Below, piece after piece: positions 8,766-52,937 of a stretch of DNA of 64,000 nucleotides. Position 1 is the stretch's first letter. Every line of letters starts with the position of its first letter. Location: positions 124,001 through 188,000 of the IMG/VR virus record IMGVR_UViG_3300036770_006296. One strand, 5' to 3'. Below the pieces are notes generated by a model. The model searched no databases, was not told the DNA's origin, and saw only the letters and a list, made by a program, of their open reading frames with translations. The position numbers and the translations under genes were made by a program.

Positions 8766-9572
8766 TTGAAATATATTAAACTATTCGAGTCTTTCCTTAA
8801 CGACTCCTCTACTATTATATTATTCGGACCCCAAGGGGTTGGTAAAAGCACACTTGCAAAAGAACTAGGTAAACAACTAAACATGGAAGTAGTTGGATCC
8901 GATGATTTTATTGATCAGGGAAATTGGTCAAAAGAAGAGATATGGAGTAAAGGGTGGCAAGTTAGAAAACAAAACGAATATAAAGGTATGATTAAGTACC
9001 TTAATGATAATTTAGGTAAGCCTGTTATATTGGACGTTGGTGGTAGCCATGGAGTATGGGACGGTAGAATGTTAGAAGATATTATGAATATGCTAGAACC
9101 ATATCCTAATAGATTCTTAATAATACCTTCTAAGAATGAAATAGAAAACCAAGAGTTTTTAAGAGGTAGATTATTGAAAAGAGAATTGGATATGCACCCA
9201 TCCAATATTAAATATTGGGAAGCTGTTTTGAAGGGTGATACAAGCTTTGCAAAAGATTTTGACCAAGAAAAAAGGAATGAATTTTTAGAGAGAGTAGAAC
9301 TAGTAAGGAAAGAAGAAAAATATAGAACAATGGCTATGAATATGCTTAAATCTAGCCAGAACAGATATAACTCTCTAAAAAGCGGGGTTGAGTGGATGGT
9401 TTACGGTAATTCACCAGAACAAAAATTCGATTTTGAAATGAATAAGATTGAGGATTATTCTAAGTTCTTTATAGACACGATGAAAAATTCAGGAATAGCT
9501 AATCACATAATTTATAATAAGGATAAGCCCTCCAATTTGTTAGTTGATGAAATAAAAAAATTATTAAAATAG
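8766..9572 (+). CDS. P-loop kinase (shikimate/nucleotide kinase-like), CTS-like N-terminus
   Basis: IILFGPQGVGKST Walker A, VVGSDDF, ILDVGG; TTG start LKYIKLFESF (an ATG GCA TTT lies 8 nt upstream, out of frame). Confidence 0.8.
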   Translation: MKYIKLFESFLNDSSTIILFGPQGVGKSTLAKELGKQLNMEVVGSDDFIDQGNWSKEEIWSKGWQVRKQNEYKGMIKYLNDNLGKPVILDVGGSHGVWDGRMLEDIMNMLEPYPNRFLIIPSKNEIENQEFLRGRLLKRELDMHPSNIKYWEAVLKGDTSFAKDFDQEKRNEFLERVELVRKEEKYRTMAMNMLKSSQNRYNSLKSGVEWMVYGNSPEQKFDFEMNKIEDYSKFFIDTMKNSGIANHIIYNKDKPSNLLVDEIKKLLK

Positions 9573-9573
9573 A

Positions 9574-10299
9574 ATGAGACATTTAAAATTATTTGAATCG
9601 TTTATAGCTAAGAAAAATCCTAACTATAAAAAACCTGAGTATGAATTTAAAGAGTTCTATAGGGCTTTTAAATCTTATCCAGAGTTAAGAGAGCTTCTCC
9701 CCTCGGAGATAGACCAAGATATATTTGATATTAGAGAAGATGGATTTGGGGGAGAGCCAAAATGGTTAGAAAACCACGTGGATCCGCCTAGCAAACCGGG
9801 CGAAATAACAACTGATGAACTCTTAGATATAGCTGAGGAAAGAGATCCAAGATTTGTTCCTTTTATTCTTTGGTGTCGTGAATTATTTGAATGTGGGGAA
9901 ATGGAAAAGATTCCTCTTGATTATTTAAGGAGAGGATTAGCTACTACATTTAAAAATCATGATTGGGATATTTTAGAGAAAGATCCGGATTATTTAGGTA
10001 AATGTGAGAGCGAATACAATAAAGCAATCGAAGCAGGATTAGACGACTATACCCTTGGTAATACATTAGGGCTTGTAAAAAAATATCCAGACATTGCTAT
10101 AAACATGGCTCAATTCTGGGCGACTTACATAAAAGGATCCATAGCACACTTTAACCGTGTTGAAGAAAGTGGAGGACAATTACCATGTACACAGTTTATA
10201 TTGTATAGAGGTAATTACTACACAATAGGAGGTAGAAGAAGAATGTTCTGGCACTTCTATAATCACATAGATCCCACAGTTTGGATAATGGAACAATAA
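9574..10299 (+). CDS. Hypothetical protein, CTS-like N-terminus, weak ParB/Srx-like C-terminal motif
   Basis: MRHLKLFESF; YYTIGGRRRM. Confidence 0.7.
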   Translation: MRHLKLFESFIAKKNPNYKKPEYEFKEFYRAFKSYPELRELLPSEIDQDIFDIREDGFGGEPKWLENHVDPPSKPGEITTDELLDIAEERDPRFVPFILWCRELFECGEMEKIPLDYLRRGLATTFKNHDWDILEKDPDYLGKCESEYNKAIEAGLDDYTLGNTLGLVKKYPDIAINMAQFWATYIKGSIAHFNRVEESGGQLPCTQFILYRGNYYTIGGRRRMFWHFYNHIDPTVWIMEQ

Positions 10300-10303
10300 G
10301 TGT

Positions 10304-10771
10304 ATGTATTTATTAGAAGCTTCACATTTTGATACCACTTACGGAAGGGCTAGTTATGGCTATTATCTTATCGGATACAAGAGCGACGAGGAATGTAGAA
10401 AAAAAATAGAGGATATCCTTTTCGATCTAGAATTTGAAAGAGAACACGCTCGTATGATTATAGATGGGATACCTGATGTTTCTTTTGTTCAACATGGGGA
10501 GGATGATCATTATGAGGTTAACAAGATTGGAAGAATAAATTCTCCTTGTGAGTTCTATAAAACTATAGCAGATAGCTATTATAGATTTAAGAGTTATATG
10601 GACGATGACACTAACACTGAATATGATGAGTACTACTTTACATATTATGACGAGGATTATTTCGTAAGCGGTGACAGTATAAATAGCAACAACCGCCACT
10701 TCTTTTATAACATAGAATTAATGAGAAGATATAGAATATGTTTTAATCCATTAAAGAATCTTATAAAATAG
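10304..10771 (+). CDS. Acidic Tyr-rich hypothetical protein
   Basis: 155-aa ORF in co-oriented array. Confidence 0.7.
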   Translation: MYLLEASHFDTTYGRASYGYYLIGYKSDEECRKKIEDILFDLEFEREHARMIIDGIPDVSFVQHGEDDHYEVNKIGRINSPCEFYKTIADSYYRFKSYMDDDTNTEYDEYYFTYYDEDYFVSGDSINSNNRHFFYNIELMRRYRICFNPLKNLIK

Positions 10772-10797
10772 GATATATAATAGTAAATAATAAAAAA

Positions 10798-11538
10798 ATG
10801 AAAAAGCACCTTAAATCTTTTGACGATTTCTCTTTAAATGAGGGGATATTTGACATCTTTAGAAGTAAGAAAGAAATGCCTCCTAGCTTTGGTTATTCAC
10901 CGGATAAGAGTAAAGACTCTTATTTAAAATCCGCTACACATTCACAGATAAATATAACTTATGAAACCAGCTGGGATGCTTCTTTTGTTATTGATATTTC
11001 GGGAGATTTAATATCAAAAGGGAGAGATAGCTATGTTATAACACCTAGAAAAATTAAGGTTTTTCCTACATATAAAGGATCAACATACGGTGGTACAGTA
11101 AATAATATTCCTATCGATTTTTATGGACATTATTATAATAGGGGAACGGATCAATATGAGAAAAACCCAATTCCTTTACAACAAAGTCAGCGTTTGAGTG
11201 AAATTGATGATTTGGAGGATGATATTAACAGAGAAATGCAGTCTCATATAGGAAAAGATTTAACACTTAGTTTTTATGAATTGGATCTAGAAGCTTGGGC
11301 AGAAGAACATTCGGACCCTCTGTTTATAATGGGAAAGAAAACTCCTAGTTGGGTAAAAAATGGTGTTAAGCTTCCTTTGATTGAAGGAGGGGAACTTCCA
11401 GAAACAAATTTATTAGACGATAGAAATAGGTTAAAAGAGGCTATTTGGGTAAGCATCTCTGGGATGGGATATGCCTTTGCAAGACCAGGAAATGGTATAT
11501 TGAGAGAAATATCTGTTTATAGCACAGAAATGTGGTAA
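10798..11538 (+). CDS. Hypothetical protein, CTS-like N-terminus
   Basis: MKKHLKSFDDFSLNE; GGATATATA at 10781. Confidence 0.8.
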   Translation: MKKHLKSFDDFSLNEGIFDIFRSKKEMPPSFGYSPDKSKDSYLKSATHSQINITYETSWDASFVIDISGDLISKGRDSYVITPRKIKVFPTYKGSTYGGTVNNIPIDFYGHYYNRGTDQYEKNPIPLQQSQRLSEIDDLEDDINREMQSHIGKDLTLSFYELDLEAWAEEHSDPLFIMGKKTPSWVKNGVKLPLIEGGELPETNLLDDRNRLKEAIWVSISGMGYAFARPGNGILREISVYSTEMW

Positions 11539-11553: not shown

Positions 11554-11841
11554 ATGAAAACATTCAATGATTATAAATACGGGAGATTAGATGAATACCA
11601 AGCTCCTTTTTATTCCTCCGCCGAAAAGATCAAGGCAATAGTTTCTAGCGACACTGTTGCTAGTAAAATGGGAATGCAAAGTGTAGATTATATAAATCAA
11701 AAGTCTGAATTAGTTTACGCACTTAAAAGTAATGCTGTTCCTGGATATTATTTTAAGGTCACTTTAAACGAGACGCCAGGAAATCAGTACGGGGAAGGTA
11801 AAAAATATTCCGTACTATCGGTAGAAAAACTCGTACCTTAA
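11554..11841 (+). CDS. Small hypothetical protein, CTS-like N-terminus
   Basis: MKTFNDYKYGRLDE. Confidence 0.7.
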   Translation: MKTFNDYKYGRLDEYQAPFYSSAEKIKAIVSSDTVASKMGMQSVDYINQKSELVYALKSNAVPGYYFKVTLNETPGNQYGEGKKYSVLSVEKLVP

Positions 11842-11844
11842 CAG

Positions 11845-12489
11845 ATGAGATATATTAAATCAATAGATCAATTTATAAACGAGCAGCTATTTTCTGATGC
11901 TAATAGATTTGCTAAATTACTAGGTTTAGGAGGAGGTGAGGCAGGTGCTTCTGGCTCAGACTCTCCCAGCGGACCAGTTTCCACTTCCCGAAATGACGAG
12001 GCATCGTGCCCAAACTACGACTGCTGGACTCACTTTGGTAAGGATGCTTTTTGGAACGGAACAAGTCAAATAGGAGGTAGAACAGTACCAAAGATAACAA
12101 TCCAAAAATCTCCAACATCTTTTAATATTAATTATGATGGACCTGCTTCGGGATTTCTACTTAAACATGCCAAAGGGGGTAAAGGAGATACTATCCATCA
12201 GTTATTAAATGTTCTAACATTAGAGCTTAATGAGTACCTTAAAACTATAAGTGTCAAGCCTGACGTGAAAAATATTAAGATGGAAATGGTGGGAAGTAAA
12301 TTAAGTGTTTCTGTTCCTCTTGTTAAGGTTCCCGAAGGCGTCCACTATCTTATAGCAAGAAGAGGAGGATTAGGTCATGGAGGGGATTTTACTGGACTAA
12401 TGAAATATAAAAAAATGGAAGGATACGAGGAGGCTAAGCACAAATCGGGTAGTCTCACAGAAAAGTTTGTAACGGTAATAAGCAAATAG
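11845..12489 (+). CDS. NEQLF-module protein 1 (unknown C-terminal domain)
   Basis: MRYIKSIDQFINEQLFSDANRFAKLLG then Gly/Ser linker. Confidence 0.8.
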   Translation: MRYIKSIDQFINEQLFSDANRFAKLLGLGGGEAGASGSDSPSGPVSTSRNDEASCPNYDCWTHFGKDAFWNGTSQIGGRTVPKITIQKSPTSFNINYDGPASGFLLKHAKGGKGDTIHQLLNVLTLELNEYLKTISVKPDVKNIKMEMVGSKLSVSVPLVKVPEGVHYLIARRGGLGHGGDFTGLMKYKKMEGYEEAKHKSGSLTEKFVTVISK

Positions 12490-12500: not shown

Positions 12501-13490
12501 ATGAAAGATCTTAAATATATTTTATTGTTTGAAAATTTTTCTAATGCTATTGATATTAATGAAAATGCTAAAGAAAATTTAAAAACATCCACTAAATTTT
12601 TAAGACTAAAGCCTAGATTTTTATCGAAGATCAAAAAGATCCTTGGTGTATCTAATGATAAAGAACTTGCTAAAGAAGACATCAAGCAATTTCAGAAAAA
12701 AAGAGGAATAAAAGAGGATGGTAATTTAGATCACAGAACTATTCTTTCCGGGTTAAAAGGTGAAGAACCAGATAACACTAATAATCTCTCCAAAGAAACC
12801 CCTACTATACCGGGTGAAAAATCTCCCATAAAAAATGCTAAAGCTAATGAGAATTTTATAAGTGAAGAGAACGAGACCGATTATTTAGCTAAATATACGT
12901 CGCAAAAAAAACAAGTAATAGGGTTCTTAAACTCGATATTTCCTTCAACGTTACCTTTTATAAATGATAAGGTTGATTCCGCTATCCCGCCTAAATTTGA
13001 AAAGTGCTATACAGTAAATTATCTAGTTTCCTCTAAGGAGGTTTGCTTTAGTGCGGGTCTTAGTGTTGAAATTAAATCAATAAAAATAAAAGACGCTACA
13101 TTCACTGCTCCCACAGAGTTTAAAGCAGATGGATATGTTAAAGGTAAACTAAAAGGGACTGTTGATCTTAAATTTTTTGCCCATATTATAGGGGAAAAGG
13201 GAATAGGCGATGATCTTTCGATAGATTTCGAGCAGAACGTTTGGTTTTATAAATTCTCTCAAATACAGATATATCCTCCATTATTAAACATATCAACAAA
13301 GATCTATGATCTTGGGGTTGTTTGGGCTTGGGTTTCTAATAATAATTTCAAAATAGAAAACTCATTAATTGGAACATATAAATGGGATCTTCCTATCCAA
13401 AAGAACGTAAACACATGTTTTGATCCTAAAGGAGGACCTTACATAAAAAATGTATCATCTTCGGATCTTAATAAATGGATATCCATATAA
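12501..13490 (+). CDS. Hypothetical protein, CTS-like N-terminus, PG-binding-like motif
   Basis: MKDLKYILLFENF; IKQFQKKRGIKEDGNLDHRT resembles PG_binding_1; flanked by the 78-bp repeats. Confidence 0.75.
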   Translation: MKDLKYILLFENFSNAIDINENAKENLKTSTKFLRLKPRFLSKIKKILGVSNDKELAKEDIKQFQKKRGIKEDGNLDHRTILSGLKGEEPDNTNNLSKETPTIPGEKSPIKNAKANENFISEENETDYLAKYTSQKKQVIGFLNSIFPSTLPFINDKVDSAIPPKFEKCYTVNYLVSSKEVCFSAGLSVEIKSIKIKDATFTAPTEFKADGYVKGKLKGTVDLKFFAHIIGEKGIGDDLSIDFEQNVWFYKFSQIQIYPPLLNISTKIYDLGVVWAWVSNNNFKIENSLIGTYKWDLPIQKNVNTCFDPKGGPYIKNVSSSDLNKWISI

Positions 13491-13605: not shown

Positions 13606-14313
13606 ATGAGACACCTTAGATCTTTTGAAGAAATAAACGAACATCTCGGAGGCAGAGATACAAGCAGCATCGATAGAATGAAAGCTAAATATCCTAAAGG
13701 CATAGAAATACCACGGAGTATCACAGCAAAAGGGACGGGAGCTTTTGAAATTGGCGTAGACTCATTAGATCCTAAATCTAAAAAATTCTTAGATATAGTC
13801 CAATTAATTAATGATCTACTTCAAAACTCTAAAGGAACTGTTAACGTTACTGTTAGTGCTGGAGCCTCTGCAGTAGGACAGGGAAGATATGATAATCAAG
13901 GTCTTGCTGAAAGAAGAAGAGATAACACTATAAAAGCTCTTAAAAACTATCCATTCATTGACCCAAGCAGAATTAAATTTACCGCAGGTAAGGCGATTGT
14001 TGGTAAATCTACGGTCAAAGACTCAAAAGAGGCAGAAGCTGAACAATTTGTTAGTGTTGACATTTCTGGAACTGGAAGCTTAAATGTTCCTGTGACTGGA
14101 GTAGAAGGAGATAACACTAACGTTTATCGTCCTGAGCTTTTTAAAAATTCTTTAGATAAGGATGATAACATACCTGTAGATATAAAAAGAATCTGTATCC
14201 AATTACCTAAGCCTTATGTTGAAAAATTTGTTAAAATGTTAGGGGAATTTAGAAAGGAGAATAATTTTAAGACAATACCTTACGGAATCTATGACATCCT
14301 TCCTAAAAAATAA
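13606..14313 (+). CDS. OmpA-like (peptidoglycan-binding) domain protein, CTS-like N-terminus
   Basis: MRHLRSFEEINE; VTVSAGAS...YDNQGLAERRRDNTIKAL resembles the OmpA-C N..L...RA motif. Confidence 0.65.
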   Translation: MRHLRSFEEINEHLGGRDTSSIDRMKAKYPKGIEIPRSITAKGTGAFEIGVDSLDPKSKKFLDIVQLINDLLQNSKGTVNVTVSAGASAVGQGRYDNQGLAERRRDNTIKALKNYPFIDPSRIKFTAGKAIVGKSTVKDSKEAEAEQFVSVDISGTGSLNVPVTGVEGDNTNVYRPELFKNSLDKDDNIPVDIKRICIQLPKPYVEKFVKMLGEFRKENNFKTIPYGIYDILPKK

Positions 14314-15690: not shown

Positions 15691-16029
15691 ATGAAGGAGC
15701 TGATAATGTTTAAAACCGACAAAGAGGATTATCAGAAATTTATAATCAACTTTGGTATAATCCCTACACTTATACTACTTCAGAAATTTGAAACACTAGA
15801 ACTTTATGAGGAATGCGCAAAAATTTTAGGAGCTATAAATGCTATAAATAAAAAAGCATTAATCTACAAACAAACAAAGCTAACAGACGATCTGATAAGT
15901 GAGGTGGTGGACGATTACAGAAAAATGGGAATGGAAGATATGGATAAAGAAAAATTAATGGTCAGATCTGAACGTTACGCCTCTATGTTTATATCCAATA
16001 ATTCCTTTATGATTTTTAAATCTAAATAG
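15691..16029 (+). CDS. Hypothetical protein
   Basis: 112-aa ORF; FETLELYEECAKI UVR-like helix. Confidence 0.65.
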   Translation: MKELIMFKTDKEDYQKFIINFGIIPTLILLQKFETLELYEECAKILGAINAINKKALIYKQTKLTDDLISEVVDDYRKMGMEDMDKEKLMVRSERYASMFISNNSFMIFKSK

Positions 16030-16393
16030 ATCCTCTTTTTATAGACAGATACCCATCCTCGTGATATTCAGCACCTATACTTTTCCAAAAATCCATACTC
16101 TCCTGTGTGGGCATTGCTAGGAAGTAGTTCACGCTGGGAAATTTATCAAACAATCTTCTTATTGCTAGTCTACCTATCCCTTTCCCTCGAAATTCTTCGT
16201 ATACATGAATCCCTGCGATCTCGGCCTCATCATATCTAAGATTTTCCTTGTAAAACCCGACATCTAATATACCAGCTTTTCTGTTATTAAAATAAATTGC
16301 AAAGGATTTGTATTGTGGTGCTTCTTCCACTAAAACAAGATCGAGATGAGCTAAATCAAGATAGTGTTCTTCGAAAAGTTTAATGTGTATCAT
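16022..16393 (-). CDS. GNAT-family acetyltransferase, CTS-like N-terminus
   Basis: IHVYEEFRGKGIGR acetyl-CoA motif A; FWKSIG motif B; MIHIKLFEE. Confidence 0.85.
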   Translation of the reverse strand: MIHIKLFEEHYLDLAHLDLVLVEEAPQYKSFAIYFNNRKAGILDVGFYKENLRYDEAEIAGIHVYEEFRGKGIGRLAIRRLFDKFPSVNYFLAMPTQESMDFWKSIGAEYHEDGYLSIKRGSI

Positions 16394-17164: not shown

Positions 17165-18061
17165 ATGGAAAAAAGAGTAAAGAGTTTCACACAATTTTTT
17201 GAAAGCACCTCCTCTGGAAATAATCAAAGCTATACATATTCTATATTTATAGAAGCAGCTGAGGAGTATGGATATCCAATTTTTGTTTTAAAGGAGAGTG
17301 GAGATCTTTTCGACGTCGATGGGAATCTTCTTGATGCTCCTGATGTGGATGATTTATTTGAAGAGTATATGGATGCTGAACATGGGCCTATGAATGGGAT
17401 TGATGGTTTTGGGGACCTTGTTGATGCAGTTGAATATTATTTAGAGGATAGATCTGAAGAAAATTTGGAAGGTATAGATTCTTGGCTAGACACTTTAGGT
17501 ATAGATGGGACGGATCCAGAGAAACTAGCGGATTCGTATGAGGGGGACAACTCATATTGGAACGAAACAGTATCTAAGTTCAACTCAAATATGAGAATTC
17601 AATTTGATGGTGATTATTTTGGAGAATTCGGAAAAAAAGCATGGAATTTTTTAGTTCTTTCTCCAGAAAGTCTAGATCCTGAACTTTATGGTCAGGATGC
17701 TATACATAACACTTCTCCTTGCTTCGATGATTTCTTCGATGAGTGTCCTTTTAATTTGTGTTATAATAATGATTCTGATATTTTGTATACATGGTCAGAT
17801 GCAGGAAATCATAAATATGAATTCTTAGAGACAGGGTTAATGAAGCAGGATCTACAATTACCAATTATTGATGTCCTATTAAAGATATTAAATAGTGATA
17901 GAACTGAGATAATTACTCAATTAATTAAAAATTTCCTTTCAAAACAAACGGCAAGCCAATTATATAAGGAGATAATACAAAGATTACAAGAAGAAGGAAA
18001 CTCTAAAATAATTAGCACAATAAAGGGAGCGAGAATGCTGGGAAGATTCGGTGTTATTTAA
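17165..18061 (+). CDS. Acidic hypothetical protein, CTS-like N-terminus and C-terminal KGARMLGRFG motif
   Basis: MEKRVKSFTQFFES; GGATATATA at 17140. Confidence 0.8.
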   Translation: MEKRVKSFTQFFESTSSGNNQSYTYSIFIEAAEEYGYPIFVLKESGDLFDVDGNLLDAPDVDDLFEEYMDAEHGPMNGIDGFGDLVDAVEYYLEDRSEENLEGIDSWLDTLGIDGTDPEKLADSYEGDNSYWNETVSKFNSNMRIQFDGDYFGEFGKKAWNFLVLSPESLDPELYGQDAIHNTSPCFDDFFDECPFNLCYNNDSDILYTWSDAGNHKYEFLETGLMKQDLQLPIIDVLLKILNSDRTEIITQLIKNFLSKQTASQLYKEIIQRLQEEGNSKIISTIKGARMLGRFGVI

Positions 18062-18077: not shown

Positions 18078-18581
18078 ATGAAACATATTAAACTTTTTGA
18101 AAACTTTGATCCTATAAATGAATCCGACTTTGTTGTTGATAACTATAAAATGAGTGCAACAAAAGACGGTGAGATACAAGTAGTGGACACTGCTGCTAAT
18201 AAAACTTATGTTTACGTTGTTAGTGCAGGTGTAGTTGGGATAAAAGTTAAGGATTTCCCAGAGGGTAATTCTATTCTAGTTAGTGCTTTAGGTAAAAGCA
18301 TAACTAGTCCTCTTTCTAAAGAAGGGACAACAATTAAATCCATCAAGGAAAATTTAGGGAAGTCTAAAATAAAGTTCGATCTTCCTGGTGCATCACTCAC
18401 GCTGACATGTAAAACCGGATGTGAAAAATCTGCAGATAATGTTGCTAACATAAAAGTTACTGCGGAAGAAATGGATATAGATTTGAGTGATGTACTCGAT
18501 TCAGCAAAAGAAGCAGGGCACAATGTCATGAAAGCGGTAGAGGGAGGAGCAGATAAATTAAAATCGCTCCTTAAATGGTAA
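18078..18581 (+). CDS. Hypothetical protein, CTS-like N-terminus
   Basis: MKHIKLFENFDPINE. Confidence 0.8.
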   Translation: MKHIKLFENFDPINESDFVVDNYKMSATKDGEIQVVDTAANKTYVYVVSAGVVGIKVKDFPEGNSILVSALGKSITSPLSKEGTTIKSIKENLGKSKIKFDLPGASLTLTCKTGCEKSADNVANIKVTAEEMDIDLSDVLDSAKEAGHNVMKAVEGGADKLKSLLKW

Positions 18582-19275: not shown

Positions 19276-19671
19276 TTATCTTAATTCGTAGTAATCTATT
19301 CCATTCGTTATCACCCCATAGATGTTGTCATCTATTATAAAATTATACGCTCTTCCTATTATAGATTCGGGAAGTCTTGAAAGATCTCTTTTAGAGACAA
19401 GAACCGCTATAGGCTTTTCCCTCACGTATCCACTAGGACTCATTACTATCTCTCTATTTAATATTTTAGAAAATTGATTAACTGAAGCCATCGAAACAGA
19501 TCCTGGATATTTCCATTCCTCTTGGGATATTAAATAGGGATCAATTAAATCATCAATAGCAAAAATAAAAGGAGTTTTACCGGTTTTTGTAATCAGGTAT
19601 TCTAGCTCACTTCTTGTTATAGGAGCAGGATCTTTCGTAAAGAAATTTTCAAATAATATTAAATTTTTCAT
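19276..19671 (-). CDS. Hypothetical protein, CTS-like N-terminus
   Basis: MKNLILFENF. Confidence 0.75.
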   Translation of the reverse strand: MKNLILFENFFTKDPAPITRSELEYLITKTGKTPFIFAIDDLIDPYLISQEEWKYPGSVSMASVNQFSKILNREIVMSPSGYVREKPIAVLVSKRDLSRLPESIIGRAYNFIIDDNIYGVITNGIDYYELR

Positions 19672-19675: not shown

Positions 19676-21271
19676 TCATTTCTTTAATTTCCAGCTTATT
19701 GCTCCAGCCCATGAGTCTTCCAGAGTTCTGAGATCGAAAGGAATAGTAATCTTTCCTGTTGCACTACCAGAAGTTCCCATTACTCTGTACGTCCCCCTTT
19801 GTCTATCTAAGTCGTGGATTACTCCTTCGGAATTTCCTGAACTTACTCTATCCCCTATTTTTATGTAATCTAAATGTGGGTATTTAGAAGAGATTTCTTT
19901 CTCTGGCTCTTCCTCTACAACTAGTAAAATTTTATTTATTTTATTTTTTAATATTTTCTCTAGATCTGCTCTTATTTCCACTTCTGGATCCTGGGATATT
20001 TTTTTCAATTCATTTGTAGCATAGTCAAGTACTGAGTTCAATAATATTTTTTTCTCGCCAGCATTAATAATTATTGGGGTTGGTTCTTTTAATAAATAAC
20101 CTCCTGGTCTCCACATTCTTCTCTCTATGCTTTCCGCTGATGTTCCCTGCATATCTGCTACTGCATCTAAGAAAGATTTTTTAAGGAGATTAACTTTATA
20201 TCTTTCGTCCGGCTCGTATTTTTTACCGCTTGGTCCAAAATTGTATAGGGCGTAACAAAATATATTTTCATTTATTTTTTTTATTGATTCTTTGGCGATT
20301 TTAGAGAAGATGTCAGATCCTTTTAATCTTTCCTCAGTTATATTTTTTGTTATGTCTACAATGCCTGATAGAATTTCAACTATTTTATTGGAGATATCTC
20401 TTAGGTCTACTCCTTGATTTATATTATCGTCTATGATGATCATTTTTCCGAAGTTGCCAGCATTATCCCCTAATCCACAATGGTGTACAGCGCTTATAAA
20501 TGCTTCTGTTGCTGTGTTATATTTTGGTCTTAGCGAGCTTCTTATTCCTCCCATTTCCCCGGAGGATCTTATTTCAAAGCTAGGATCTTTCCCTTCTTGT
20601 GCTTGTATTGATAGATTAGCTATCATTCCATCTATCCATGGCTCTACCCTTCGCATAGTGGGTGAATATCTAGGTTTCTCGTCTCCTTTTCTGTGTATTA
20701 CTTTGCCAGTCCTTTTATTGATTACATCTTTCTCGTAGTATCCTCTGGGTATATCAAGCTCTGATTCTATTTTTCTGTTATATGAATCCCAGTCTACAGC
20801 CTGCATAACATCTGTATATTTTATTTTTGGTATACTGATTACTGTAGCATTTGGATAGATATTTAAAAAAGATCCCTCCATTTTCTTAACAAGATCCCTG
20901 CTACTTCCTATGGTTACTATGTAGTCTATATTTCCCTCTATATTATTTGTGAAGGTGTATCTAAAAAAATCCTCCAAGGTTTCACCAGGAGCCATCGAAA
21001 AACGGTCATCTTTTAAAGGATCCATTATAAATTTCTTAGCATTATCACCTTCCTCTGTGTCAGCAACATATGGAGTTCTTGGATAAAGACCAAAATATAT
21101 TTTTATATTTGCTATACCTCTTTCCGAAAAATTAAGATTGTTTGGATTTATTGTTTTTAGTAGCTCATTGGGGTTACTTGGATCGTTTTTTACAGATAAA
21201 TATGTTTTCCCCTCACTATCGTACCAAGCACCCTCGTTTATAAACTGTAGGAAATTTTTAAGATGATTCAT
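19676..21271 (-). CDS. Phosphoribosyltransferase-like protein with C-terminal SH3/KOW-like domain, CTS-like N-terminus
   Basis: MNHLKNFLQFINE; KMIIIDDNINQGVDL resembles the type I PRTase PRPP-binding loop; IKIGDRV..GVI..L...GTYRV. Confidence 0.6.
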   Translation of the reverse strand: MNHLKNFLQFINEGAWYDSEGKTYLSVKNDPSNPNELLKTINPNNLNFSERGIANIKIYFGLYPRTPYVADTEEGDNAKKFIMDPLKDDRFSMAPGETLEDFFRYTFTNNIEGNIDYIVTIGSSRDLVKKMEGSFLNIYPNATVISIPKIKYTDVMQAVDWDSYNRKIESELDIPRGYYEKDVINKRTGKVIHRKGDEKPRYSPTMRRVEPWIDGMIANLSIQAQEGKDPSFEIRSSGEMGGIRSSLRPKYNTATEAFISAVHHCGLGDNAGNFGKMIIIDDNINQGVDLRDISNKIVEILSGIVDITKNITEERLKGSDIFSKIAKESIKKINENIFCYALYNFGPSGKKYEPDERYKVNLLKKSFLDAVADMQGTSAESIERRMWRPGGYLLKEPTPIIINAGEKKILLNSVLDYATNELKKISQDPEVEIRADLEKILKNKINKILLVVEEEPEKEISSKYPHLDYIKIGDRVSSGNSEGVIHDLDRQRGTYRVMGTSGSATGKITIPFDLRTLEDSWAGAISWKLKK

Positions 21272-23302: not shown

Positions 23303-23495
23303 AATAGTAACATTCAGCTGTAGTAATAAGATACACATCTACGAAAGAGGATGTGGAAAATTACCTAATCCCCCATATAAAAAACACGATAACATAGATT
23401 CAGCTGTTTTTTATATGTCCCAGGTTTTAGGTGTTAATGATATAGAGATAGTAATAGAAAAAAAATTAAAAAGAGAGAGTGATGAAATTAACTGA
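23289..23495 (+). CDS. Small hypothetical protein
   Basis: Start moved to ATG 23289. Confidence 0.55.
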   Translation: METNRIVTFSCSNKIHIYERGCGKLPNPPYKKHDNIDSAVFYMSQVLGVNDIEIVIEKKLKRESDEIN

Positions 23496-27698: not shown

Positions 27699-28382
27699 AT
27701 GAAGAGGATAAAACTTTTTGAAAATTTTGACAATGAAGGGAAGTACTTATGGCCTGAAGCGGCGCTGTGGATAGAAGAACTTCATCCAGAAGAAATATGT
27801 TTTTTAGCTCTTTATGTTTCAATTGTAGAATACAACAAAAATCTTCCCTATAACAGAAGTACAGAAGATCTGCTTTTTCCTATAAAAACCGATTATAAAA
27901 GTTATGAATTAGAACCGGATTCTTATGACGATGAAGATGGAATTTCTAATTTTGAACTCTATTATGAAATACCATCAAAGAACAAAGAAAATTGTATATT
28001 TTCTATTGATGTTACAGGCAAAGGACATTTCACCCAAATTAGAAGAGGTGGATATATGGAGCCAGACGAAGGGGGTGAACCTATCCTTGATTCAATAGAA
28101 TTTGATTCTGCTTACTATTTAGATTCCAAAGAGGAGACGGAAATAAATTTTTCTGATAACTCTTATATTTTTAAATCTGACATTCTAACAAAAAAAGATC
28201 TAACTAACATAATAGAGTATGCCGCAGCTCAAAGAATAGAAGCTGATGATAATACGGATACTCATAAGCCTTTTATTCCACAAAGATTAATGGACAAGTG
28301 TCAAGAAATTAGAAAGAATCATCCGGATTCAGTAAAAGGTGGTAATTTGCTGAACAGATTTGGAATTTTGGGAACAAACTAG
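27699..28382 (+). CDS. Acidic hypothetical protein, CTS-like N-terminus and C-terminal KGGNLLNRFG motif
   Basis: Start moved to ATG 27699 (MKRIKLFENF) behind GGATATATA. Confidence 0.8.
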   Translation: MKRIKLFENFDNEGKYLWPEAALWIEELHPEEICFLALYVSIVEYNKNLPYNRSTEDLLFPIKTDYKSYELEPDSYDDEDGISNFELYYEIPSKNKENCIFSIDVTGKGHFTQIRRGGYMEPDEGGEPILDSIEFDSAYYLDSKEETEINFSDNSYIFKSDILTKKDLTNIIEYAAAQRIEADDNTDTHKPFIPQRLMDKCQEIRKNHPDSVKGGNLLNRFGILGTN

Positions 28383-28682: not shown

Positions 28683-29075
28683 ATGAGACATATACGATTA
28701 TTTGAAAATTTCGACCAGGATAAAACAGTAGACTCATCTGGATTATTATTTGATTGGATTCCCTTTGATACGGAAGTTAATAATCCAATTAATTCTTCAG
28801 TCCCTACAGAAATAACTCCACAGAAACTTATAGAGTATTGCAACGCTAATCCGGAGATAGGTAAAGTAGGTTTGTATATTGCGCATAAAAAAAATCCTGC
28901 TGGGGGATTTACTAGATATGTAACCACTTCAACAAATCCTTTGTTATTAGAATCGGCAATGTTTGATAGCGAGTTTAACAAGATTAATGATGTGAAAGGA
29001 ATAAGTGCAGCATCTCTTGATTCATTTGGGAAGGGAGCTTCAATGATGAACAGATTCGGATTATTCGACAAGTAA
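28683..29075 (+). CDS. Hypothetical protein, CTS-like N-terminus and C-terminal KGASMMNRFG motif
   Basis: MRHIRLFENF; GGATATATA at 28654. Confidence 0.8.
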   Translation: MRHIRLFENFDQDKTVDSSGLLFDWIPFDTEVNNPINSSVPTEITPQKLIEYCNANPEIGKVGLYIAHKKNPAGGFTRYVTTSTNPLLLESAMFDSEFNKINDVKGISAASLDSFGKGASMMNRFGLFDK

Positions 29076-44472: not shown

Positions 44473-45074
44473 AAAAAATATTTTTAATTATTATCCTATT
44501 GGGGATAAGGGGATTTTGCTTTTCTCAAAACTTTTATCCGATACAAACAATTTTAAAAGGAGATTCTGTTGTTATATACACGCTAGAACAGTCTCAAGAT
44601 ATAAATCTAATGATACAGAATCAAAAATCATTAAATGTAAGCTATAAGAGCAAATATGAGCACTATCTAGGAAAAACAGACAGTTTAGAAAAAATAGTAG
44701 CTGCGCAACTGTACTTGATTGATAGCTTAAGATTAGTTCAAAAAAATCAAGATAGCTTGGAAAAAAAATTACACACAATAGAAAGTTGGTTAGTAAAAGC
44801 ATCAATCGATAACTCTTACCTCTATATGTCATGGCAGGATTCTAAAATTAAATCGGTGGACCTAACATTATATACTGTTCATTGCAGTATGCAAACAGGA
44901 ACGATAAGAATGGTTAGGAGAGGTCCTAATGATGAATTTTATACCTGGAAAGGAATAAACCACACAAGAAGAGAAAGCCCCTCCATTAACTGGGAATTAA
45001 AATATCCAGAGGAAGATAGGCCGATAGTTAATAATTTACCAGTAGATATCAAAATAAGTCAATATGTAAGATGA
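44469..45074 (+). CDS. Secreted/periplasmic hypothetical protein in two-component cluster
   Basis: Signal peptide ending FCFSQ; overlaps both kinase genes. Confidence 0.75.
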   Translation: MKKIFLIIILLGIRGFCFSQNFYPIQTILKGDSVVIYTLEQSQDINLMIQNQKSLNVSYKSKYEHYLGKTDSLEKIVAAQLYLIDSLRLVQKNQDSLEKKLHTIESWLVKASIDNSYLYMSWQDSKIKSVDLTLYTVHCSMQTGTIRMVRRGPNDEFYTWKGINHTRRESPSINWELKYPEEDRPIVNNLPVDIKISQYVR

Positions 45075-47626: not shown

Positions 47627-48196
47627 TTATTCAAATCTTTTTTCTTCCGCTATAGAATTTAAATATTCGTTCAGTTCTAGTTCTTTTCCTCCTTTACTTA
47701 CAAACAGAGTATATTTATTATTATCCGCTTCCTCATCGGTCGTTCTATCTATGACATCGTCAGCTCCTAGTTTGAATTTTATTCTATTTGCTAAATCTGA
47801 TCTTGTTTTTTCGTCATTGAATTCCCATTGATATTCAGAAATAATGTTTGTTATTTCCTCTCTAATTATATCCGATTCAACACTAGAGGGAAGCAAATTA
47901 TTAAGATATACTACATTTGATAAATGCGATGCAATAGTAGGAACTAGATACATTTTCATCATAAGAACCGGGGTCATAGAAACTTCATCTATCCAAGACT
48001 CAAATTCAAAATCCATGATCTTGTCTTTGTGTGTATGTATGTAATCCTCGATAACTTCGATACATCCCTCATAGTCCTCTATAAGATCCTCTATAGTAAA
48101 AGGAAAAAACTTTTTAATTGTTTTTGGTCCTCTCTGAAGAGATTCTATTTTTTCAAATATTGAATCTCTAATATCAACTTTTATATTTTTTTCCAT
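47627..48196 (-). CDS. Hypothetical protein
   Basis: 189-aa ORF; WEFNDEKTR segment. Confidence 0.7.
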   Translation of the reverse strand: MEKNIKVDIRDSIFEKIESLQRGPKTIKKFFPFTIEDLIEDYEGCIEVIEDYIHTHKDKIMDFEFESWIDEVSMTPVLMMKMYLVPTIASHLSNVVYLNNLLPSSVESDIIREEITNIISEYQWEFNDEKTRSDLANRIKFKLGADDVIDRTTDEEADNNKYTLFVSKGGKELELNEYLNSIAEEKRFE

Positions 48197-48258
48197 ATTA
48201 TTTCTAGATATTTATTGTAAAAAAATTTCGTTCTCAATAGGATAAATAAAGATAAAAT

Positions 48259-48459
48259 ATGGACTATAGAGAATACCTTGAAAACATAAAAAAGAAACTA
48301 GACTCTTTAAATAAAGTTGCTGGAGTTAACCCAGAAGCAGACAGGGAGCTTAAAAAACAAATGCAACAATCTCAGATGCCATCCGATGAGATATTCGATA
48401 TGTTAGGGCACGGTGCTAAAATGTGGATGGATAAGAATAAAAATCAAAATCCTTTGTAA
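48259..48459 (+). CDS. Small hypothetical protein
   Basis: 66-aa ORF. Confidence 0.6.
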   Translation: MDYREYLENIKKKLDSLNKVAGVNPEADRELKKQMQQSQMPSDEIFDMLGHGAKMWMDKNKNQNPL

Positions 48460-48510
48460 CTAATCTGGCTTTAGACCGTAAGAAGTTTATAATCCATTAA
48501 AAATGTATTA

Positions 48511-49392
48511 ATGCGGGATTTTAAAATAATTAACCGGATAACAAATACCTCTGATAATCTAAACCGATACTTCAATGAAATATCAAAATATGAATTATTA
48601 AGTGCTGAGAAAGAGGCTGAACTTGCTTTTAAAGCTAAGGCTGGTGACGAAAAAGCTAAAGAAGCAATATTAAAATCTAATCTAAGATTTGTTATTTCTG
48701 TTGCAAAATCGTATGTTTCTGGCAACTCCCCACTGGAAGATCTTATATCTGAAGGAAACAAAGGATTAGTAGAAGCAGTCGAAAATTTCGATCCGACTAC
48801 CGGATTCAAATTTATTAGTTATGCTGTTTGGCATATTAGGAAAAACATACTTGTATATCTTAATAATCACACAAGATCCATAAGAATCCCTTCTAACGTA
48901 AATAATGAGATGCGAAAATATCATGCTATAGAGGAATCTTTTATCTCTTATAATGGTAGGGAACCTTCAATAGATGAGATGCTAGAGATAATAGAAAATC
49001 CTGAATATGGGATCCAGATTTCTAACGCCACAATAGATACAATTAAAAACACCCCGTTATCTATTCCTCTCGAAAATTACGGAAAAGAAAATGACGAGAT
49101 TGGCTCTCCTCTAAGTTGGTTGCAATCATCTGAAAATAGTGATGGTATAACATTGAGTGACGATATCAGGAATATTATCTTGCGAGTTCTTTCAGAGTTA
49201 AAGCCTATGGAAAGGGAAGTTACTATTTTAAAATACGGACTTGGAGACTCAAAAGAACCTATGAGCTATAAAGCTATAGGGGAGAAGCTAGAAAAAACAA
49301 CAGAATGGGCTAGGATTATTTCTAAGAAAGCTGAAATGAGGATGAAGGCTATTATTAGGAGAAGAAAAATAAAAGAATTATTCTTCGATTAA
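48511..49392 (+). CDS. Second, divergent sigma-70 family factor
   Basis: NLRFVISVAKSY; DLISEGNKGL; FKFISYAVWHIRK; region 4 TTEWARII. Confidence 0.9.
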   Translation: MRDFKIINRITNTSDNLNRYFNEISKYELLSAEKEAELAFKAKAGDEKAKEAILKSNLRFVISVAKSYVSGNSPLEDLISEGNKGLVEAVENFDPTTGFKFISYAVWHIRKNILVYLNNHTRSIRIPSNVNNEMRKYHAIEESFISYNGREPSIDEMLEIIENPEYGIQISNATIDTIKNTPLSIPLENYGKENDEIGSPLSWLQSSENSDGITLSDDIRNIILRVLSELKPMEREVTILKYGLGDSKEPMSYKAIGEKLEKTTEWARIISKKAEMRMKAIIRRRKIKELFFD

Positions 49393-50596: not shown

Positions 50597-50597
50597 A

Positions 50598-50939
50598 TTA
50601 TCTTCTAAATTTATTAGGAAACATTCTTCTCCACTCGTGACCTTGTGGAATGTCCTTTGCTCTTACACCGAATATCTTTTCTTCTGGGCATGGATCCATT
50701 TCTCTAACCATTCGATTGTTCATCCAGGTCTCTATTTTAACAAAGTTATTATTACAAGCCCAAGATTCTATTGATCTGTTCCATGATGAACCTGTCATAA
50801 ACGGAAAATTTGTATTTGAGTTATTAACGACATCCGTTATTTGACTTCCTTGAAGTTCAACTTTTATCTCACCAAAATTCCTATGCTTAAGAATCATAGT
50901 CCTTTGGTTGAAATTTTCGTATAGTTCTATATAATTCAT
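50598..50939 (-). CDS. Hypothetical protein, CTS-like N-terminus
   Basis: Start moved to 50939 (MNYIELYENFNQ). Confidence 0.75.
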   Translation of the reverse strand: MNYIELYENFNQRTMILKHRNFGEIKVELQGSQITDVVNNSNTNFPFMTGSSWNRSIESWACNNNFVKIETWMNNRMVREMDPCPEEKIFGVRAKDIPQGHEWRRMFPNKFRR

Positions 50940-50940
50940 T

Positions 50941-51615
50941 TTATTTTTTACATCTTCCTGTTTTAAAACCATCTGGTATTTTTTCCCCCTCGGGTATTCT
51001 TTTGTTTTCTAGCAATACAGGATTGTAATACCATTTATAATTCTTTTTTCTCATTGGATTATTATCGCCTGAAAATCTTTCCCTATATCCATTTATTATA
51101 CTTTCGTAATTTTCACCGAATCTTTGTCTTTCGTTTTTATATTTGGATCTTGATTTTTTTAAATTTATTTTTATATTTTCTGCTTTTTCTAAACCGTATA
51201 TTTCTTCTAAAGATTTTCCTTTTTTCCTTTTTGTGCTGTCGTGATTCTTTGATAATTTTTCCTTGTGGTCTAAAGAGAATTCCCTATTTTTAAGTGCTTT
51301 ACTAATTTTATTTTTTATTTCATCCAATTTAGGATTATTGCTCATTGTATCTCCTCCGTCGCCGCCTTTAGATATATTATATCCTATATTCCTATCATTA
51401 GATTTATAAAATTCTATCCAATATTTTTCAGAATTAGATAGATCCTCGTAATTATCTGTTTCGTATATTATTTCTTTTTGAAAATATTCTATTCCATATT
51501 TTTTTATAGCTCTTTTAATTAATACACCCGAACCCATATAATTTTTATTAGAAAGTGTATCTTTACCTATGTATATTTTGCCGTCTAATATATTAGTTAT
51601 TATATAAACCTGCAT
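50941..51615 (-). mobile_element. Free-standing GIY-YIG homing endonuclease (Seg-like, NUMOD3-type tail)
   Basis: VYIITN...KIYIGK; YMGSG; E.YWI; GYNISKGGDGG; KISKALK...DHKEKLS. Confidence 0.88.
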
Positions 51616-51626
51616 ATTTTATATTT

Positions 51627-52199
51627 TTACCAAGGATTGCTAGATTTAATACCTATCAATTTACGATAACGTGAGATATTGCACGACCAGTATTTAGCTT
51701 TCCATTTAGGCCCAGGTTGATCACAGCGCATTCTTTTTTGAAACGATCTTGCTTTTTTAGGATCTGCATTATTAACTCTCATTCCTGGTTCACCGAATCC
51801 AACCTTAACAATGTTACCGCTTTGATTTTTTGTGTATACACCAAATTTCCTAGGACCTGAAGGTGTTCTGAAAGGTCTATTGAGGTTTACTTTTCTACCC
51901 CTATATTCTGCCTCATGTAGCTCTTCTACATCTTCAAAAGGTATGTCGAGAAAAACCTCTCTTCCCTCATATATTCCCCTTTTGCCAGCATCAGTACCAA
52001 CCAACCAGATTTCATCTTCAGTTAGTCCAATATTTCCTTCATTAAATAATATTCTAGCTTCGTTAACAAGATCTAACCACGCTTCTGATTCCACCCTAAA
52101 AACGCTTTCTAGTAAGCCTATACCGTTGTTAAAGTGATAAGATAAGTTCTCAGATAAGGAATTATTATTAAATGCGTTAAAATCGCTTATATGCTTCAT
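51627..52199 (-). CDS. Basic conserved viral hypothetical, CTS-like N-terminus
   Basis: MKHISDFNAF; AEYRGRKVNLNRPFR...KFGVY...VGFG...KAKYWSC; GGATATATA upstream. Confidence 0.8.
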   Translation of the reverse strand: MKHISDFNAFNNNSLSENLSYHFNNGIGLLESVFRVESEAWLDLVNEARILFNEGNIGLTEDEIWLVGTDAGKRGIYEGREVFLDIPFEDVEELHEAEYRGRKVNLNRPFRTPSGPRKFGVYTKNQSGNIVKVGFGEPGMRVNNADPKKARSFQKRMRCDQPGPKWKAKYWSCNISRYRKLIGIKSSNPW

Positions 52200-52214
52200 A
52201 TAAATTATATATCC

Positions 52215-52937
52215 TTATTTGATTAGATCATTCTGAAACATAATATCACATATGTATCTTGAGATTTTTGTATCCGATGGATAGTGGATGCCAACCACCT
52301 CCCTGCTTCTTGCAATTTTTTCTCCTACTTCTCTAACCTCGGACGCAATTTCAGGATGTTTTCTTGCATAATGCTCTGCCATTGTAAATGCAGTGAGTGC
52401 GTGCCCGCTCGGGTAAGCTGCGGTCATGGCATCAGTTCTTATTAATGGATACAATGGAATGTCATAAGCTTTAGCTAACTGATATGGCCTAGGCCTATTA
52501 ATGACGTCCTTCAAATAATTAAGAATCGCGTCCGTTTGGTTGTCTATCCTAAAATATCCATCCATAGTCTCTTCGTATCCTTTTGAATTTAAAAAATCTA
52601 TAAAAATGTTTGGTAGATTGCTCTGGTCATCAGCGTATCTAGCAAATGTAACATCATCTCCCGTTGCATTTGATGTTAATTCTAGTAATTCTTCTAGGTC
52701 TTTTCTTGTAGTTTCGCTGTCGTTCAAAGGAGCTTCTTTTATGATCTTTTCTATTAGCCCCTCTTTTTCGAACCATTTTCTTATGGGATCATTCTTATCT
52801 TCTATGATCTCCTTGAATTCAATCGGTGCATTTCCATAAACTATTTGATTAATATCAACGGTTTTTTCTGACTTATTTAAAGATTGCTCAAGAATTATAG
52901 AATTATTTAATTCTTTAAAATAGCTTATATACTTCAT
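52215..52937 (-). CDS. PAP2-superfamily phosphatase, CTS-like N-terminus
   Basis: K....RPRP, YPSGH, SR...GIHYPSD; MKYISYFKE. Confidence 0.88.
   Translation of the reverse strand: MKYISYFKELNNSIILEQSLNKSEKTVDINQIVYGNAPIEFKEIIEDKNDPIRKWFEKEGLIEKIIKEAPLNDSETTRKDLEELLELTSNATGDDVTFARYADDQSNLPNIFIDFLNSKGYEETMDGYFRIDNQTDAILNYLKDVINRPRPYQLAKAYDIPLYPLIRTDAMTAAYPSGHALTAFTMAEHYARKHPEIASEVREVGEKIARSREVVGIHYPSDTKISRYICDIMFQNDLIK

What the first reader, a model, noticed from the sequence alone, without database searches (positions are those of the whole stretch)
8766..52937. Tagged small-molecule and protein-modifying enzymes: candidate injected anti-defence toolbox
Seen: the tag is fused to a P-loop kinase (8766), a GNAT acetyltransferase (16022), a PAP2 phosphatase (52215) and a weak ParB/Srx-like protein (9574). 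Established: T4 injects IPI* (restriction inhibitor) and Alt (ADP-ribosyltransferase) from the head. Inference: these enzymes act before phage gene expression, for example on nucleotide signals, lipid carriers or host defence proteins.
Basis: inference. Interest (0 to 1): 0.68.

Follow-up and report, generated by a model that had tools for sequence, protein, structure and literature searches.

The report
Capsid-targeting tags on phage enzymes
About a fifth of the genes in this piece of an uncultivated giant phage begin with a short peptide that closely matches the signal phage T4 uses to load proteins into its head, so several enzymes here are probably carried in the virion and delivered with the DNA.

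Summary
A 10-13-residue N-terminal peptide (consensus MKHIKLFExF-LNE) heads 22 of 113 window ORFs. These include a shikimate/gluconate-kinase-like P-loop kinase, a short GNAT, a soluble class-A PAP2 phosphatase with all catalytic motifs, and a protein with weak ParB/Srx fold matches. A CHAP peptidoglycan hydrolase carries it too.

The tag occurs only at N-termini, is conserved as peptide rather than as DNA, is disordered in two confident models, and is joined to orthologous domains by variable linkers.

It reproduces the four experimentally defined determinants of the T4 capsid targeting sequence (aromatic-x-x-Phe-aliphatic-x-Glu). PAP2 orthologues in other phages carry the T4-register form itself.

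Every nearly complete tag-bearing genome tested has a T4-type major capsid protein, and six of seven have a matching prohead protease. In five of those six the protease is fused to tandem, mostly 14-residue, repeats (YSEY[LI]AEN) of the same motif.

Tagged genes share a GATATATA upstream element with the protease genes.

The best reading is that the tag loads cargo onto the prohead scaffold and is cut off by the protease.

Packaging and injection are not demonstrated. The anti-defence role is still inference, supported only indirectly by tagged Acb1-like phosphoesterases in other tag-bearing viral contigs. I class it as a new variant of a known kind.

The parts
8766..9572 (+). Tagged P-loop small-molecule kinase (shikimate/gluconate-kinase class) with a roughly 80-residue helical insertion. 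TTG start. The tag ends in F-L-N-D.
9574..10299 (+). Tagged conserved protein with an invariant YYT-GGRRR motif. Weak ParB/Srx-fold matches over the C-terminal half.
16022..16393 (-). Tagged short GNAT acetyltransferase (123 aa). The R-x-x-G-x-G acetyl-CoA motif is present. The N-terminal arm of the canonical fold is missing.
52215..52937 (-). Soluble class-A PAP2 phosphatase with a degenerate tag and an I-L-E site at residues 15-17. All three catalytic motifs are intact.
7088..7891 (-). Tagged CHAP-domain protein (peptidoglycan amidase/endopeptidase family).
8290..8757 (+). ORF whose N-terminus (MIQHYEEFIAE) has the T4 register of the signal. It is the first gene of the run 8290, 8766, 9574.
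7895..8257 (-). Tagged 120-aa protein ending F-I-N-E.
245..1117 (+). Tagged 290-aa protein, no family match.
1335..1847 (+). Tagged 170-aa protein, no family match.
2371..2880 (+). Tagged 169-aa protein, no family match.
10798..11538 (+). Tagged 246-aa protein (one extra residue before the motif).
11845..12489 (+). ORF with a tag-like N-terminus (10.1 bits).
12501..13490 (+). ORF with a tag-like N-terminus (10.6 bits).
13606..14313 (+). Tagged 235-aa protein.
17165..18061 (+). ORF with a tag-like N-terminus (9.3 bits).
18078..18581 (+). Tagged 167-aa protein.
19276..19671 (-). ORF with a tag-like N-terminus (7.4 bits).
19676..21271 (-). 531-aa ORF whose N-terminus ends F-I-N-E (12.6 bits).
27699..28382 (+). 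Tagged 227-aa protein (28.5 bits, the best in the window).
28683..29075 (+). Tagged 130-aa protein.
50598..50939 (-). ORF with a tag-like N-terminus (9.4 bits). Its G026 orthologue is also tag-like.
51627..52199 (-). Tagged 190-aa protein next to the PAP2 gene. Its orthologue in G026 is tagged too.
52943..52950 (-). One example of the GATATATA upstream element, here 5 nt before the PAP2 start codon. There are 22 copies in the window, nearly all just upstream of ORF starts.

Best explanation
The tag is a capsid-targeting propeptide of the T4 kind, adapted to a lineage of huge T4-related phages of Bacteroidota.

Shown:
- It is a detachable, disordered N-terminal peptide placed in front of unrelated folded domains.
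- Its conserved residues (aromatic 7, Phe 10, aliphatic 11, Glu 13) correspond one for one to T4 CTS residues 4, 7, 8 and 10.
- Relatives encode a T4-type capsid protein and an S77 prohead protease. In five of the six matching protease ORFs examined, the C-terminal part consists of tandem, mostly 14-residue, repeats carrying the same Y-x-x-Y-[LIV]-A-E motif.

Inferred:
- The tag helix docks among the scaffold repeats while the prohead core forms.
- The protease then cuts after Glu in [L/I]-x-E. Candidate sites are L-F-E at residue 8, or [LIV]-N-E at residue 13.
- The folded enzyme stays trapped in the head and leaves with the DNA at the next infection.

On this reading the kinase, the GNAT, the PAP2 phosphatase, the ParB/Srx-like protein and the CHAP hydrolase are pre-made cargo that act before phage genes are expressed. 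Their targets are unknown. Counter-defence is one plausible role; cell-wall penetration and host takeover are others.
For: - The tag is only N-terminal: 72 strict tags in two genomes and none internal. The weight matrix finds 24 against 0.47 expected.
- Selection is at the peptide level.
- Residues 1-12 and 1-13 have pLDDT under 50 in otherwise confident models.
- Orthologues keep the tag, with linkers of roughly a dozen to about 65 residues before the conserved domain.
- T4 IPII and IPIII start MKTYQEFIAE. In T4, residues 4 and 7 target, residues 8 and 10 govern processing, and gp21 cuts after L/I-X-E (PMC9026906).
- The T4 CTS scores 8.4 bits on the megaphage matrix; only 1.8e-4 of internal windows score as high.
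- [FYW]xxF[ILVM]xE is 19-22 times enriched at N-termini.
- Of 120 PAP2 homologues, 33 carry the T4-register form and 55 the long form. One short-form orthologue lies on a contig with a Gp23 capsid gene. The same DNA pattern also finds an IPII-like protein in a T4-type genome.
- Gp23 is present in 14 of 20 tag-bearing contigs, including all those at least 90% complete.
- Relatives that hold the orthologue of the 9574 gene have both Gp23 and S77.
- Protease-repeat fusions occur in G026, G001, G003, G004 and, irregularly, G008.
- GATATATA precedes the protease gene in several relatives. In the parent contig it precedes 15 of 19 strict tags against 51 of 310 other ORFs, p = 2e-8. None of six replication genes has it.
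- Other proteins with the tag include Acb1-like 2H phosphoesterases, GNATs and an LPD11 polyvalent-protein domain.
Against: - There are no proteomic, cleavage or injection data.
- The window phage's own capsid and protease genes are missing from the 206-kb contig, which CheckV rates 81% complete. The argument therefore rests on relatives that share 89 of 329 ORFs at a mean of 45% identity.
- The similarity to T4 is a short motif.
- About 20% of window ORFs are tagged. Elsewhere in the parent contig, AAA ATPases of about 500 aa also have tag-like N-termini. That is a great deal of cargo.
- Three of the four enzymes lack a Glu at position 13.
- The PAP2 tag scores only 5.2 bits in this copy.
- The capsid gene of G001 has no GATATATA of its own.
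- The GNAT lacks the N-terminal arm of the canonical fold.
Confidence: 0.65

Rival explanations
1. The proteins are packaged, but they are not an anti-defence toolbox. The tag does load them into the head, and they serve other ends: condensing or organising the DNA (an inner-body-like mass), piercing the cell wall, redirecting host transcription or metabolism, or simply filling the scaffold.
For: - A tagged CHAP hydrolase fits wall penetration.
- Most tagged ORFs have no recognisable enzyme domain.
- Several tagged proteins are conserved core genes rather than fast-changing accessory genes. The 9574 family is 50-92% identical across 83 homologues, and the PAP2 and kinase families have 229 and 177 homologues.
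- T4 IPIII contributes to head assembly and Alt to takeover (PMC9026906).
Against: - Tagged 2H/Acb1-like phosphoesterases and an LPD11 domain occur in other tag-bearing viral contigs.
- The kinase, GNAT and PAP2 are absent from the closest complete relative, as accessory arms-race genes would be.
- T4 IPI is an anti-restriction protein.
Confidence: 0.35
2. The tag addresses the proteins to something other than the head. Candidates are a shared phage chaperone or hub, another phage-built compartment, the membrane, or timed destruction by a protease.
For: - The number and size range of tagged proteins, including AAA ATPases with tag-like N-termini, is unusual for head cargo.
- No direct evidence of packaging exists.
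Against: - All four mapped T4 CTS determinants are matched, and PAP2 orthologues carry the T4-register CTS.
- The same motif is repeated in the scaffold region fused to the prohead protease.
- The tag goes with T4-type head genes.
- The tag has no hydrophobic span of the length a membrane or secretion signal needs (direct reading of the sequences).
Confidence: 0.12
3. The conservation is at the DNA or RNA level: a shared translation-initiation region, or a recombination cassette that moves genes behind a common promoter and first codons. The peptide itself would have no function.
For: - Many tagged genes also share the GATATATA element 5-20 nt upstream.
- The codons are AT-rich, as start regions in Bacteroidota tend to be (own knowledge).
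Against: - Synonymous codons vary freely at conserved residues, including the two Ser codon families.
- The peptide is kept across orthologues that are only about 50% identical, and across genomes with different upstream DNA.
- Tagged genes inside operons lack the upstream element.
- The motif recurs in-frame inside the scaffold repeats.
Confidence: 0.04

Closest known systems
T4 capsid targeting sequence and internal proteins (IPI, IPII, IPIII, Alt)
   Same: - An N-terminal peptide of about 10 residues, with aromatic-x-x-Phe-aliphatic-x-Glu and an L/I-x-E cleavage site.
- It is fused to unrelated proteins.
- The phage has a Gp23-type capsid and an S77 (gp21-type) protease.
- The cargo differs between related phages.
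   Different: - The tag is three residues longer at the front (MKHIK-).
- It marks tens of genes per genome rather than four or five.
- The cargo includes recognisable enzymes (kinase, PAP2, GNAT, CHAP).
- The scaffold is fused to the protease and built of tandem repeats of the same motif, which T4 gp22 is not.
- Processing and injection are unproven here.
Head-packaged ejection and inner-body proteins of phiKZ, 201phi2-1 and SPN3US
   Same: Giant phages with many internal head proteins, processed after Glu by an S77-related prohead protease and ejected into the host (PMC9026906; abstracts).
   Different: - Those phages cut at S/A-X-E.
- To my knowledge no common linear N-terminal tag has been described for them.
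- Their capsid and genome type differ from the T4-like, Lak-related lineage here.
Polyvalent proteins injected with phage or conjugative DNA (Iyer et al. 2017, as cited in PMC7824862)
   Same: Pre-made effector domains, including GNAT, ART and signal-degrading enzymes, are proposed to enter the host with the DNA. One protein with the tag carries LPD11, a polyvalent-protein domain.
   Different: There the domains are strung into one giant polypeptide. Here each domain is a separate small protein with its own address label.
Encapsulin cargo-loading peptides (own knowledge, not tested here)
   Same: A short terminal peptide that loads diverse enzymes into an HK97-fold shell.
   Different: They are usually C-terminal, bind the shell itself rather than a scaffold, are not removed by a protease, and involve no delivery into another cell.

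Membership tests
T4-type capsid targeting sequence (CTS) cargo | The peptide sits at the extreme N-terminus and is separable from the folded protein. | tested here: met
   There are no internal occurrences. The tag is disordered in two models. Linkers vary among orthologues.
T4-type capsid targeting sequence (CTS) cargo | Targeting residues: aromatic at CTS position 4 and Phe at position 7. Processing residues: aliphatic at position 8 and Glu at position 10. | tested here: met
   In the consensus of 71 tags: F/Y7 in 71, F10 in 51, L/I/V11 in 27, E13 in 34. The T4 CTS scores 8.4 bits on the tag matrix. Of the four enzymes, all have F7, the kinase and the ParB-like protein have F10 with L/I11, and none has E13. 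The kinase has D13 and the PAP2 has I-L-E at 15-17.
T4-type capsid targeting sequence (CTS) cargo | The phage encodes a gp21-type (S77) prohead protease and a Gp23-type capsid protein. | tested here: inconclusive
   Neither was found on the window's 206-kb contig, which is 81% complete. Both are present in G026 and G027, which hold 72% and 71% identical orthologues of the 9574 gene. Gp23 is present in all nearly complete tag-bearing genomes tested.
T4-type capsid targeting sequence (CTS) cargo | The protein is found in the virion, with its N-terminal peptide removed after Glu. | not testable with these tools
   This needs virion mass spectrometry. No cultured relative was found.
T4-type capsid targeting sequence (CTS) cargo | The protein is ejected into the host with the DNA. 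| not testable with these tools
   This needs an infection experiment.
PAP2 / class A acid phosphatase (52215-52937) | The three motifs KxxxxxxRP, PSGH and SRxxxxxHxxxD. | tested here: met
   All three are present and aligned to solved acid phosphatases. Pfam PAP2 scores 32.5 bits against a cut-off of 27.2.
GNAT acetyltransferase (16022-16393) | A complete GNAT fold with the acetyl-CoA motif R/Q-x-x-G-x-G/A. | tested here: inconclusive
   The motif is present (RGKGIG). Pfam scores 34.4 bits against a cut-off of 20.7. However, only profile positions 24-115 are covered and the protein is 123 aa, so the N-terminal arm is missing.
P-loop NMP-kinase-fold small-molecule kinase (8766-9572) | Walker A, a substrate-site Asp, a GG loop and lid arginines, on a shikimate/gluconate-kinase fold. 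| tested here: met
   G21-T29, S45-D46, D90-x-G-G93 and R133/R135/R139 are invariant in 32 homologues. Fold matches have E from 1.6e-4. The substrate is unknown.
ParB/Srx superfamily (9574-10299) | The ParB/Srx N-terminal fold with a Gly-rich, Arg-containing nucleotide-binding motif. | tested here: inconclusive
   An invariant GGRRR motif is present. The top fold matches are Srx, PadC, ParB and Osa, but at E 0.14 or worse and Z 4.8 or lower, over 60-100 residues. No sequence-profile match was found.

The most novel reading that the evidence does not exclude
Uncultivated T4-related megaphages of Bacteroidota run a general, sequence-readable cargo-loading system. The N-terminal tag imitates one 14-residue repeat of a coiled-coil scaffold that is fused to the prohead protease. 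Any protein given the tag is built into the core and released by the same cut that dismantles the scaffold. Roughly 7-20% of the genes are loaded in this way and delivered as a pre-made effector set: PAP2 phosphatase, kinase, GNAT, CHAP and, in other tag-bearing contigs, Acb1-like phosphoesterases. Other lineages use other tags, such as MNLQENIxRIK, on orthologous cargo.
Probability: 0.4. Interest if true: 0.85.

Novelty: new variant of a known kind. Interest (0 to 1): 0.72.

Why it matters
If the tag is a head-loading signal, the injected proteins of uncultivated giant phages can be read directly from metagenomic sequence. That would give a list of candidate first-minute effectors without culturing either the phage or its host.

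It would also extend the T4 capsid-targeting principle from a handful of small internal proteins to large sets of enzymes. It suggests a concrete mechanism, mimicry of a scaffold repeat. And it offers a natural, portable tag for packaging foreign proteins in phage heads.

Tried and rejected
- Complex prediction of the G026 protease-scaffold protein with the first 45 residues of the tagged orthologue gave no answer (score 0.00). It is evidence neither for nor against.
- Searches of cultured-phage records with three proteins found nothing: the untagged window ORF 25811-27415 and two tagged proteins from other tag-bearing contigs. No proteome of a cultured relative is therefore available.
- Gp23 and S77 were not found on the window's own contig.
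- Most tagged ORFs have no Pfam or PHROG match.
- The GNAT has no close relative in IMG/VR by peptide patterns.
- Literature searches for the tag letters, and for capsid targeting in megaphages, found no description.
- I considered GATATATA as the late promoter, but the capsid gene of G001 has no copy of its own. I call it only a promoter-like element shared with the protease genes.
- I looked for a match between the second tag type and the scaffold of its phages and saw only a loose resemblance. I make no claim from it.
- T4 gp22 has no CTS-like repeat, so scaffold mimicry is not shown for T4 itself.

Full report
**What the window is.** The window is 64 kb of an 86-kb viral record. That record is identical to positions 124,001-188,000 of a 206,617-bp IMG/VR contig, here called G006, which CheckV rates 81% complete.

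- G006 encodes T4-type replication genes: family B polymerase, helicases, ribonucleotide reductase and topoisomerase II. It also encodes a tail fibre.
- Its polymerase is closest to those of uncultured huge phages (41% identity) and the Lak megaphages of Prevotella.
- No capsid or protease gene lies on the available contig.

- *Kinase, 8766-9572.* Pfam places it in AAA_33/SKI. Its model (pLDDT 90.6) matches shikimate, gluconate and APS kinases. Walker A, the S-D pair, the D-x-G-G loop and three lid arginines are invariant in 32 homologues.
- *GNAT, 16022-16393.* Pfam Acetyltransf_1. It keeps the acetyl-CoA motif but is short and lacks the N-terminal arm.
- *PAP2, 52215-52937.* Pfam PAP2. It aligns to soluble class A acid phosphatases with all three catalytic motifs.
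- *ParB/Srx-like, 9574-10299.* It has no profile match. It belongs to a well-conserved family of 83 homologues with an invariant GGRRR motif. Its confident model (pLDDT 92.4) matches only sulfiredoxin, ParB, PadC and Osa, and only weakly.

**The tag is real.**

- The consensus from 71 tags is M-K-H-I-K-L-F-E-x-F-[L/N]-N-E.
- The strict pattern occurs at 19 N-termini in G006 and 53 in a complete 482-kb relative, G001. It is never internal.
- A weight matrix trained on G001 alone finds 24 N-termini in G006 at 8 bits or more, against 0.47 expected. It marks 22 of 113 window ORFs at 5 bits or more.
- Codons vary synonymously at the conserved residues, including both serine codon families, so the peptide is what is selected.
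- The tag is disordered in both models.
- In orthologues of the 9574 gene it is joined to the conserved domain by linkers of roughly a dozen to about 65 residues.
- The exact degenerate DNA pattern is found in 54 stretches of IMG/VR, where about 0.02 would be expected by my estimate. Many lie on contigs of 100-600 kb.

**Comparison with T4.** T4 IPII and IPIII start MKTYQEFIAE. According to the review PMC9026906:

- The first ten residues suffice for packaging.
- Residues 4 and 7 carry targeting, and residues 8 and 10 carry processing.
- Asp at residue 10 blocks processing but not targeting.
- gp21 cuts after L/I-X-E.
- The internal proteins co-purify with the scaffold gp22.

The tag's F7, F10, L11 and E13 correspond to those four T4 positions.

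- The T4 peptide scores 8.4 bits on the megaphage matrix, a value reached by 1.8e-4 of internal windows.
- The pattern [FYW]xxF[ILVM]xE is 19-22 times enriched at N-termini.
- One window ORF, 8290-8757, starts MIQHYEEFIAE.

The PAP2 family gives the strongest link. Of its 120 best homologues, 33 start with the T4-register form (for example MKNYREFIAE) and 55 with the long form. One short-form orthologue lies on a contig with a Gp23 capsid gene. The same DNA pattern also picks out an IPII-like protein in a typical T4-type genome, which serves as a positive control.

**Head machinery.**

- Gp23-type capsid genes are present in 14 of 20 tag-bearing contigs, including every one that is at least 90% complete.
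- G026 (348 kb, complete) and G027 hold 72% and 71% identical orthologues of the 9574 gene. Both have Gp23 and an S77 protease.
- In G026, G001, G003 and G004 the protease ORF (about 640-700 aa) continues into 9-13 tandem repeats spaced 14 residues apart, with unit I-S-Y-S-E-Y-[LI]-A-E-N-L-D-K-x. In G003 and G004 one further copy lies 42 residues upstream. In G008 the repeats are irregular.
- Fourteen residues are two heptads, which fits a coiled-coil scaffold (my inference).
- Each repeat contains the same aromatic-x-x-aromatic-aliphatic-x-Glu motif as the tag and the T4 CTS, and so also an L/I-x-E site.
- T4 gp22 has 16 such sites but no repeat of this kind.

**Regulation.**

- GATATATA occurs 22 times in the window against 7.1 expected, almost always just upstream of an ORF start.
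- It precedes 15 of 19 strictly tagged genes in G006 against 51 of 310 others, p = 2e-8. In the window it precedes 13 of 22 tagged against 14 of 91 untagged ORFs, p = 7e-5.
- None of six replication genes has it.
- The same element precedes the protease gene in G008, G026, G003 and G004, and the capsid gene in G002.
- This suggests co-expression with head assembly, but it is not proof. The capsid gene of G001 has no copy of its own.

**Mechanism proposed.** The shown and inferred steps are separated under Best explanation. In short, the tag docks on the scaffold repeats, the protease cuts after Glu, and the enzyme is trapped in the head and leaves with the DNA. By the T4 precedent, the kinase (Asp at position 13) and the ParB-like protein (no Glu there) would be targeted. 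They would be cut, if at all, at L-F-E8. The PAP2 has I-L-E at 15-17.

**Function.**

- Among 110 proteins with the tag from G001 and other tag-bearing contigs, three are 2H phosphoesterases that just pass Pfam's Acb1 threshold and keep both H-x-T motifs. Two are GNATs and one carries LPD11. Others are a PolX-like enzyme and an ATP-grasp enzyme.
- The kinase, GNAT and PAP2 have no orthologue in G026. The CHAP, the 8290, 9574, 51627 and 50598 proteins, and the 11554-11841 ORF do, and each orthologue has a tag-like N-terminus. Cargo therefore has a conserved part and a variable part.
- This fits a set of delivered effectors but does not establish anti-defence activity.

**Limits.** There is no virion proteome and no cultured relative. 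The window phage's head genes are missing from the contig. The complex prediction gave no answer. I found no description of the tag in the searchable literature.

Noticed in passing
Outside the window: L131:2345-4309 (-) in G026; G001 68283-70385 (-); L058, L059, L113: The S77 prohead protease is fused to 9-13 tandem repeats of YSEY[LI]AENLDK-type units, mostly spaced 14 residues apart. They look like a coiled-coil scaffold made of CTS-like units, each with an L/I-x-E cleavage site.
   Followed up: partly
Homologues of window 8766-9572 (P0216-P0328); IMG/VR loci from L135 upward: More distant orthologues of the kinase carry a different 20-residue N-terminal peptide, MNLQENIxRIKEMMGL[LIN]xE. 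That peptide heads at least 66 distinct proteins in more than 120 IMG/VR stretches. Three complete genomes with it have gp21-size S77 proteases followed by an acidic gp22-like protein. It looks like a second class of tag.
   Followed up: partly
Homologues of window 52215-52937 (for example P0178, P0191, P0204): About ten PAP2 homologues start with a third N-terminal peptide of the type MKIRLSELRKIIREE.
   Followed up: no
G006 85-121 kb (outside the window, upstream of window position 1): Three further upstream motif classes (TTCTACATT, AACCAATTAA, ATTAGCTAAG) cluster before small genes there. They may be other temporal promoter classes.
   Followed up: no
L050:7477-8667 (-): A 396-aa protein in a 597-kb contig repeats the tag three times, once at the start of each of three tandem domain copies. 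The tag appears to have been duplicated together with the domain.
   Followed up: no
window 42706-44472 (+) and 45071-46510 (+): Two paralogous large ORFs match PHROG families annotated as kinase (phrog_10912) and phrog_857 in their C-terminal parts. Neither is tagged.
   Followed up: no
window 36943-38370 (+): A Dda-like helicase (phrog_325, 2.5e-88), 69% identical to its G026 orthologue.
   Followed up: no
G006 23285-24889 and 47757-49250 (outside the window): Two AAA ATPases (phrog_1297) of about 500 aa have tag-like N-termini ending F-V-N-E and a GATATATA element upstream. G006 also encodes two CobT-like proteins (phrog_17276) at 93434 and 95932.
   Followed up: no
L110:179-1327 (-) in G026: The gene immediately downstream of the capsid gene has a tag-like N-terminus (MKNLPSFNDF...) and its own GGATATATA element.
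   Followed up: no
T4 record, L134:8946-10511: The T4 gp23 propeptide contains FGSFLTE, a CTS-like motif, ending two residues before the sequence E-I-G-G. I recall the maturation cut as lying in that stretch, but I did not check it.
   Followed up: no
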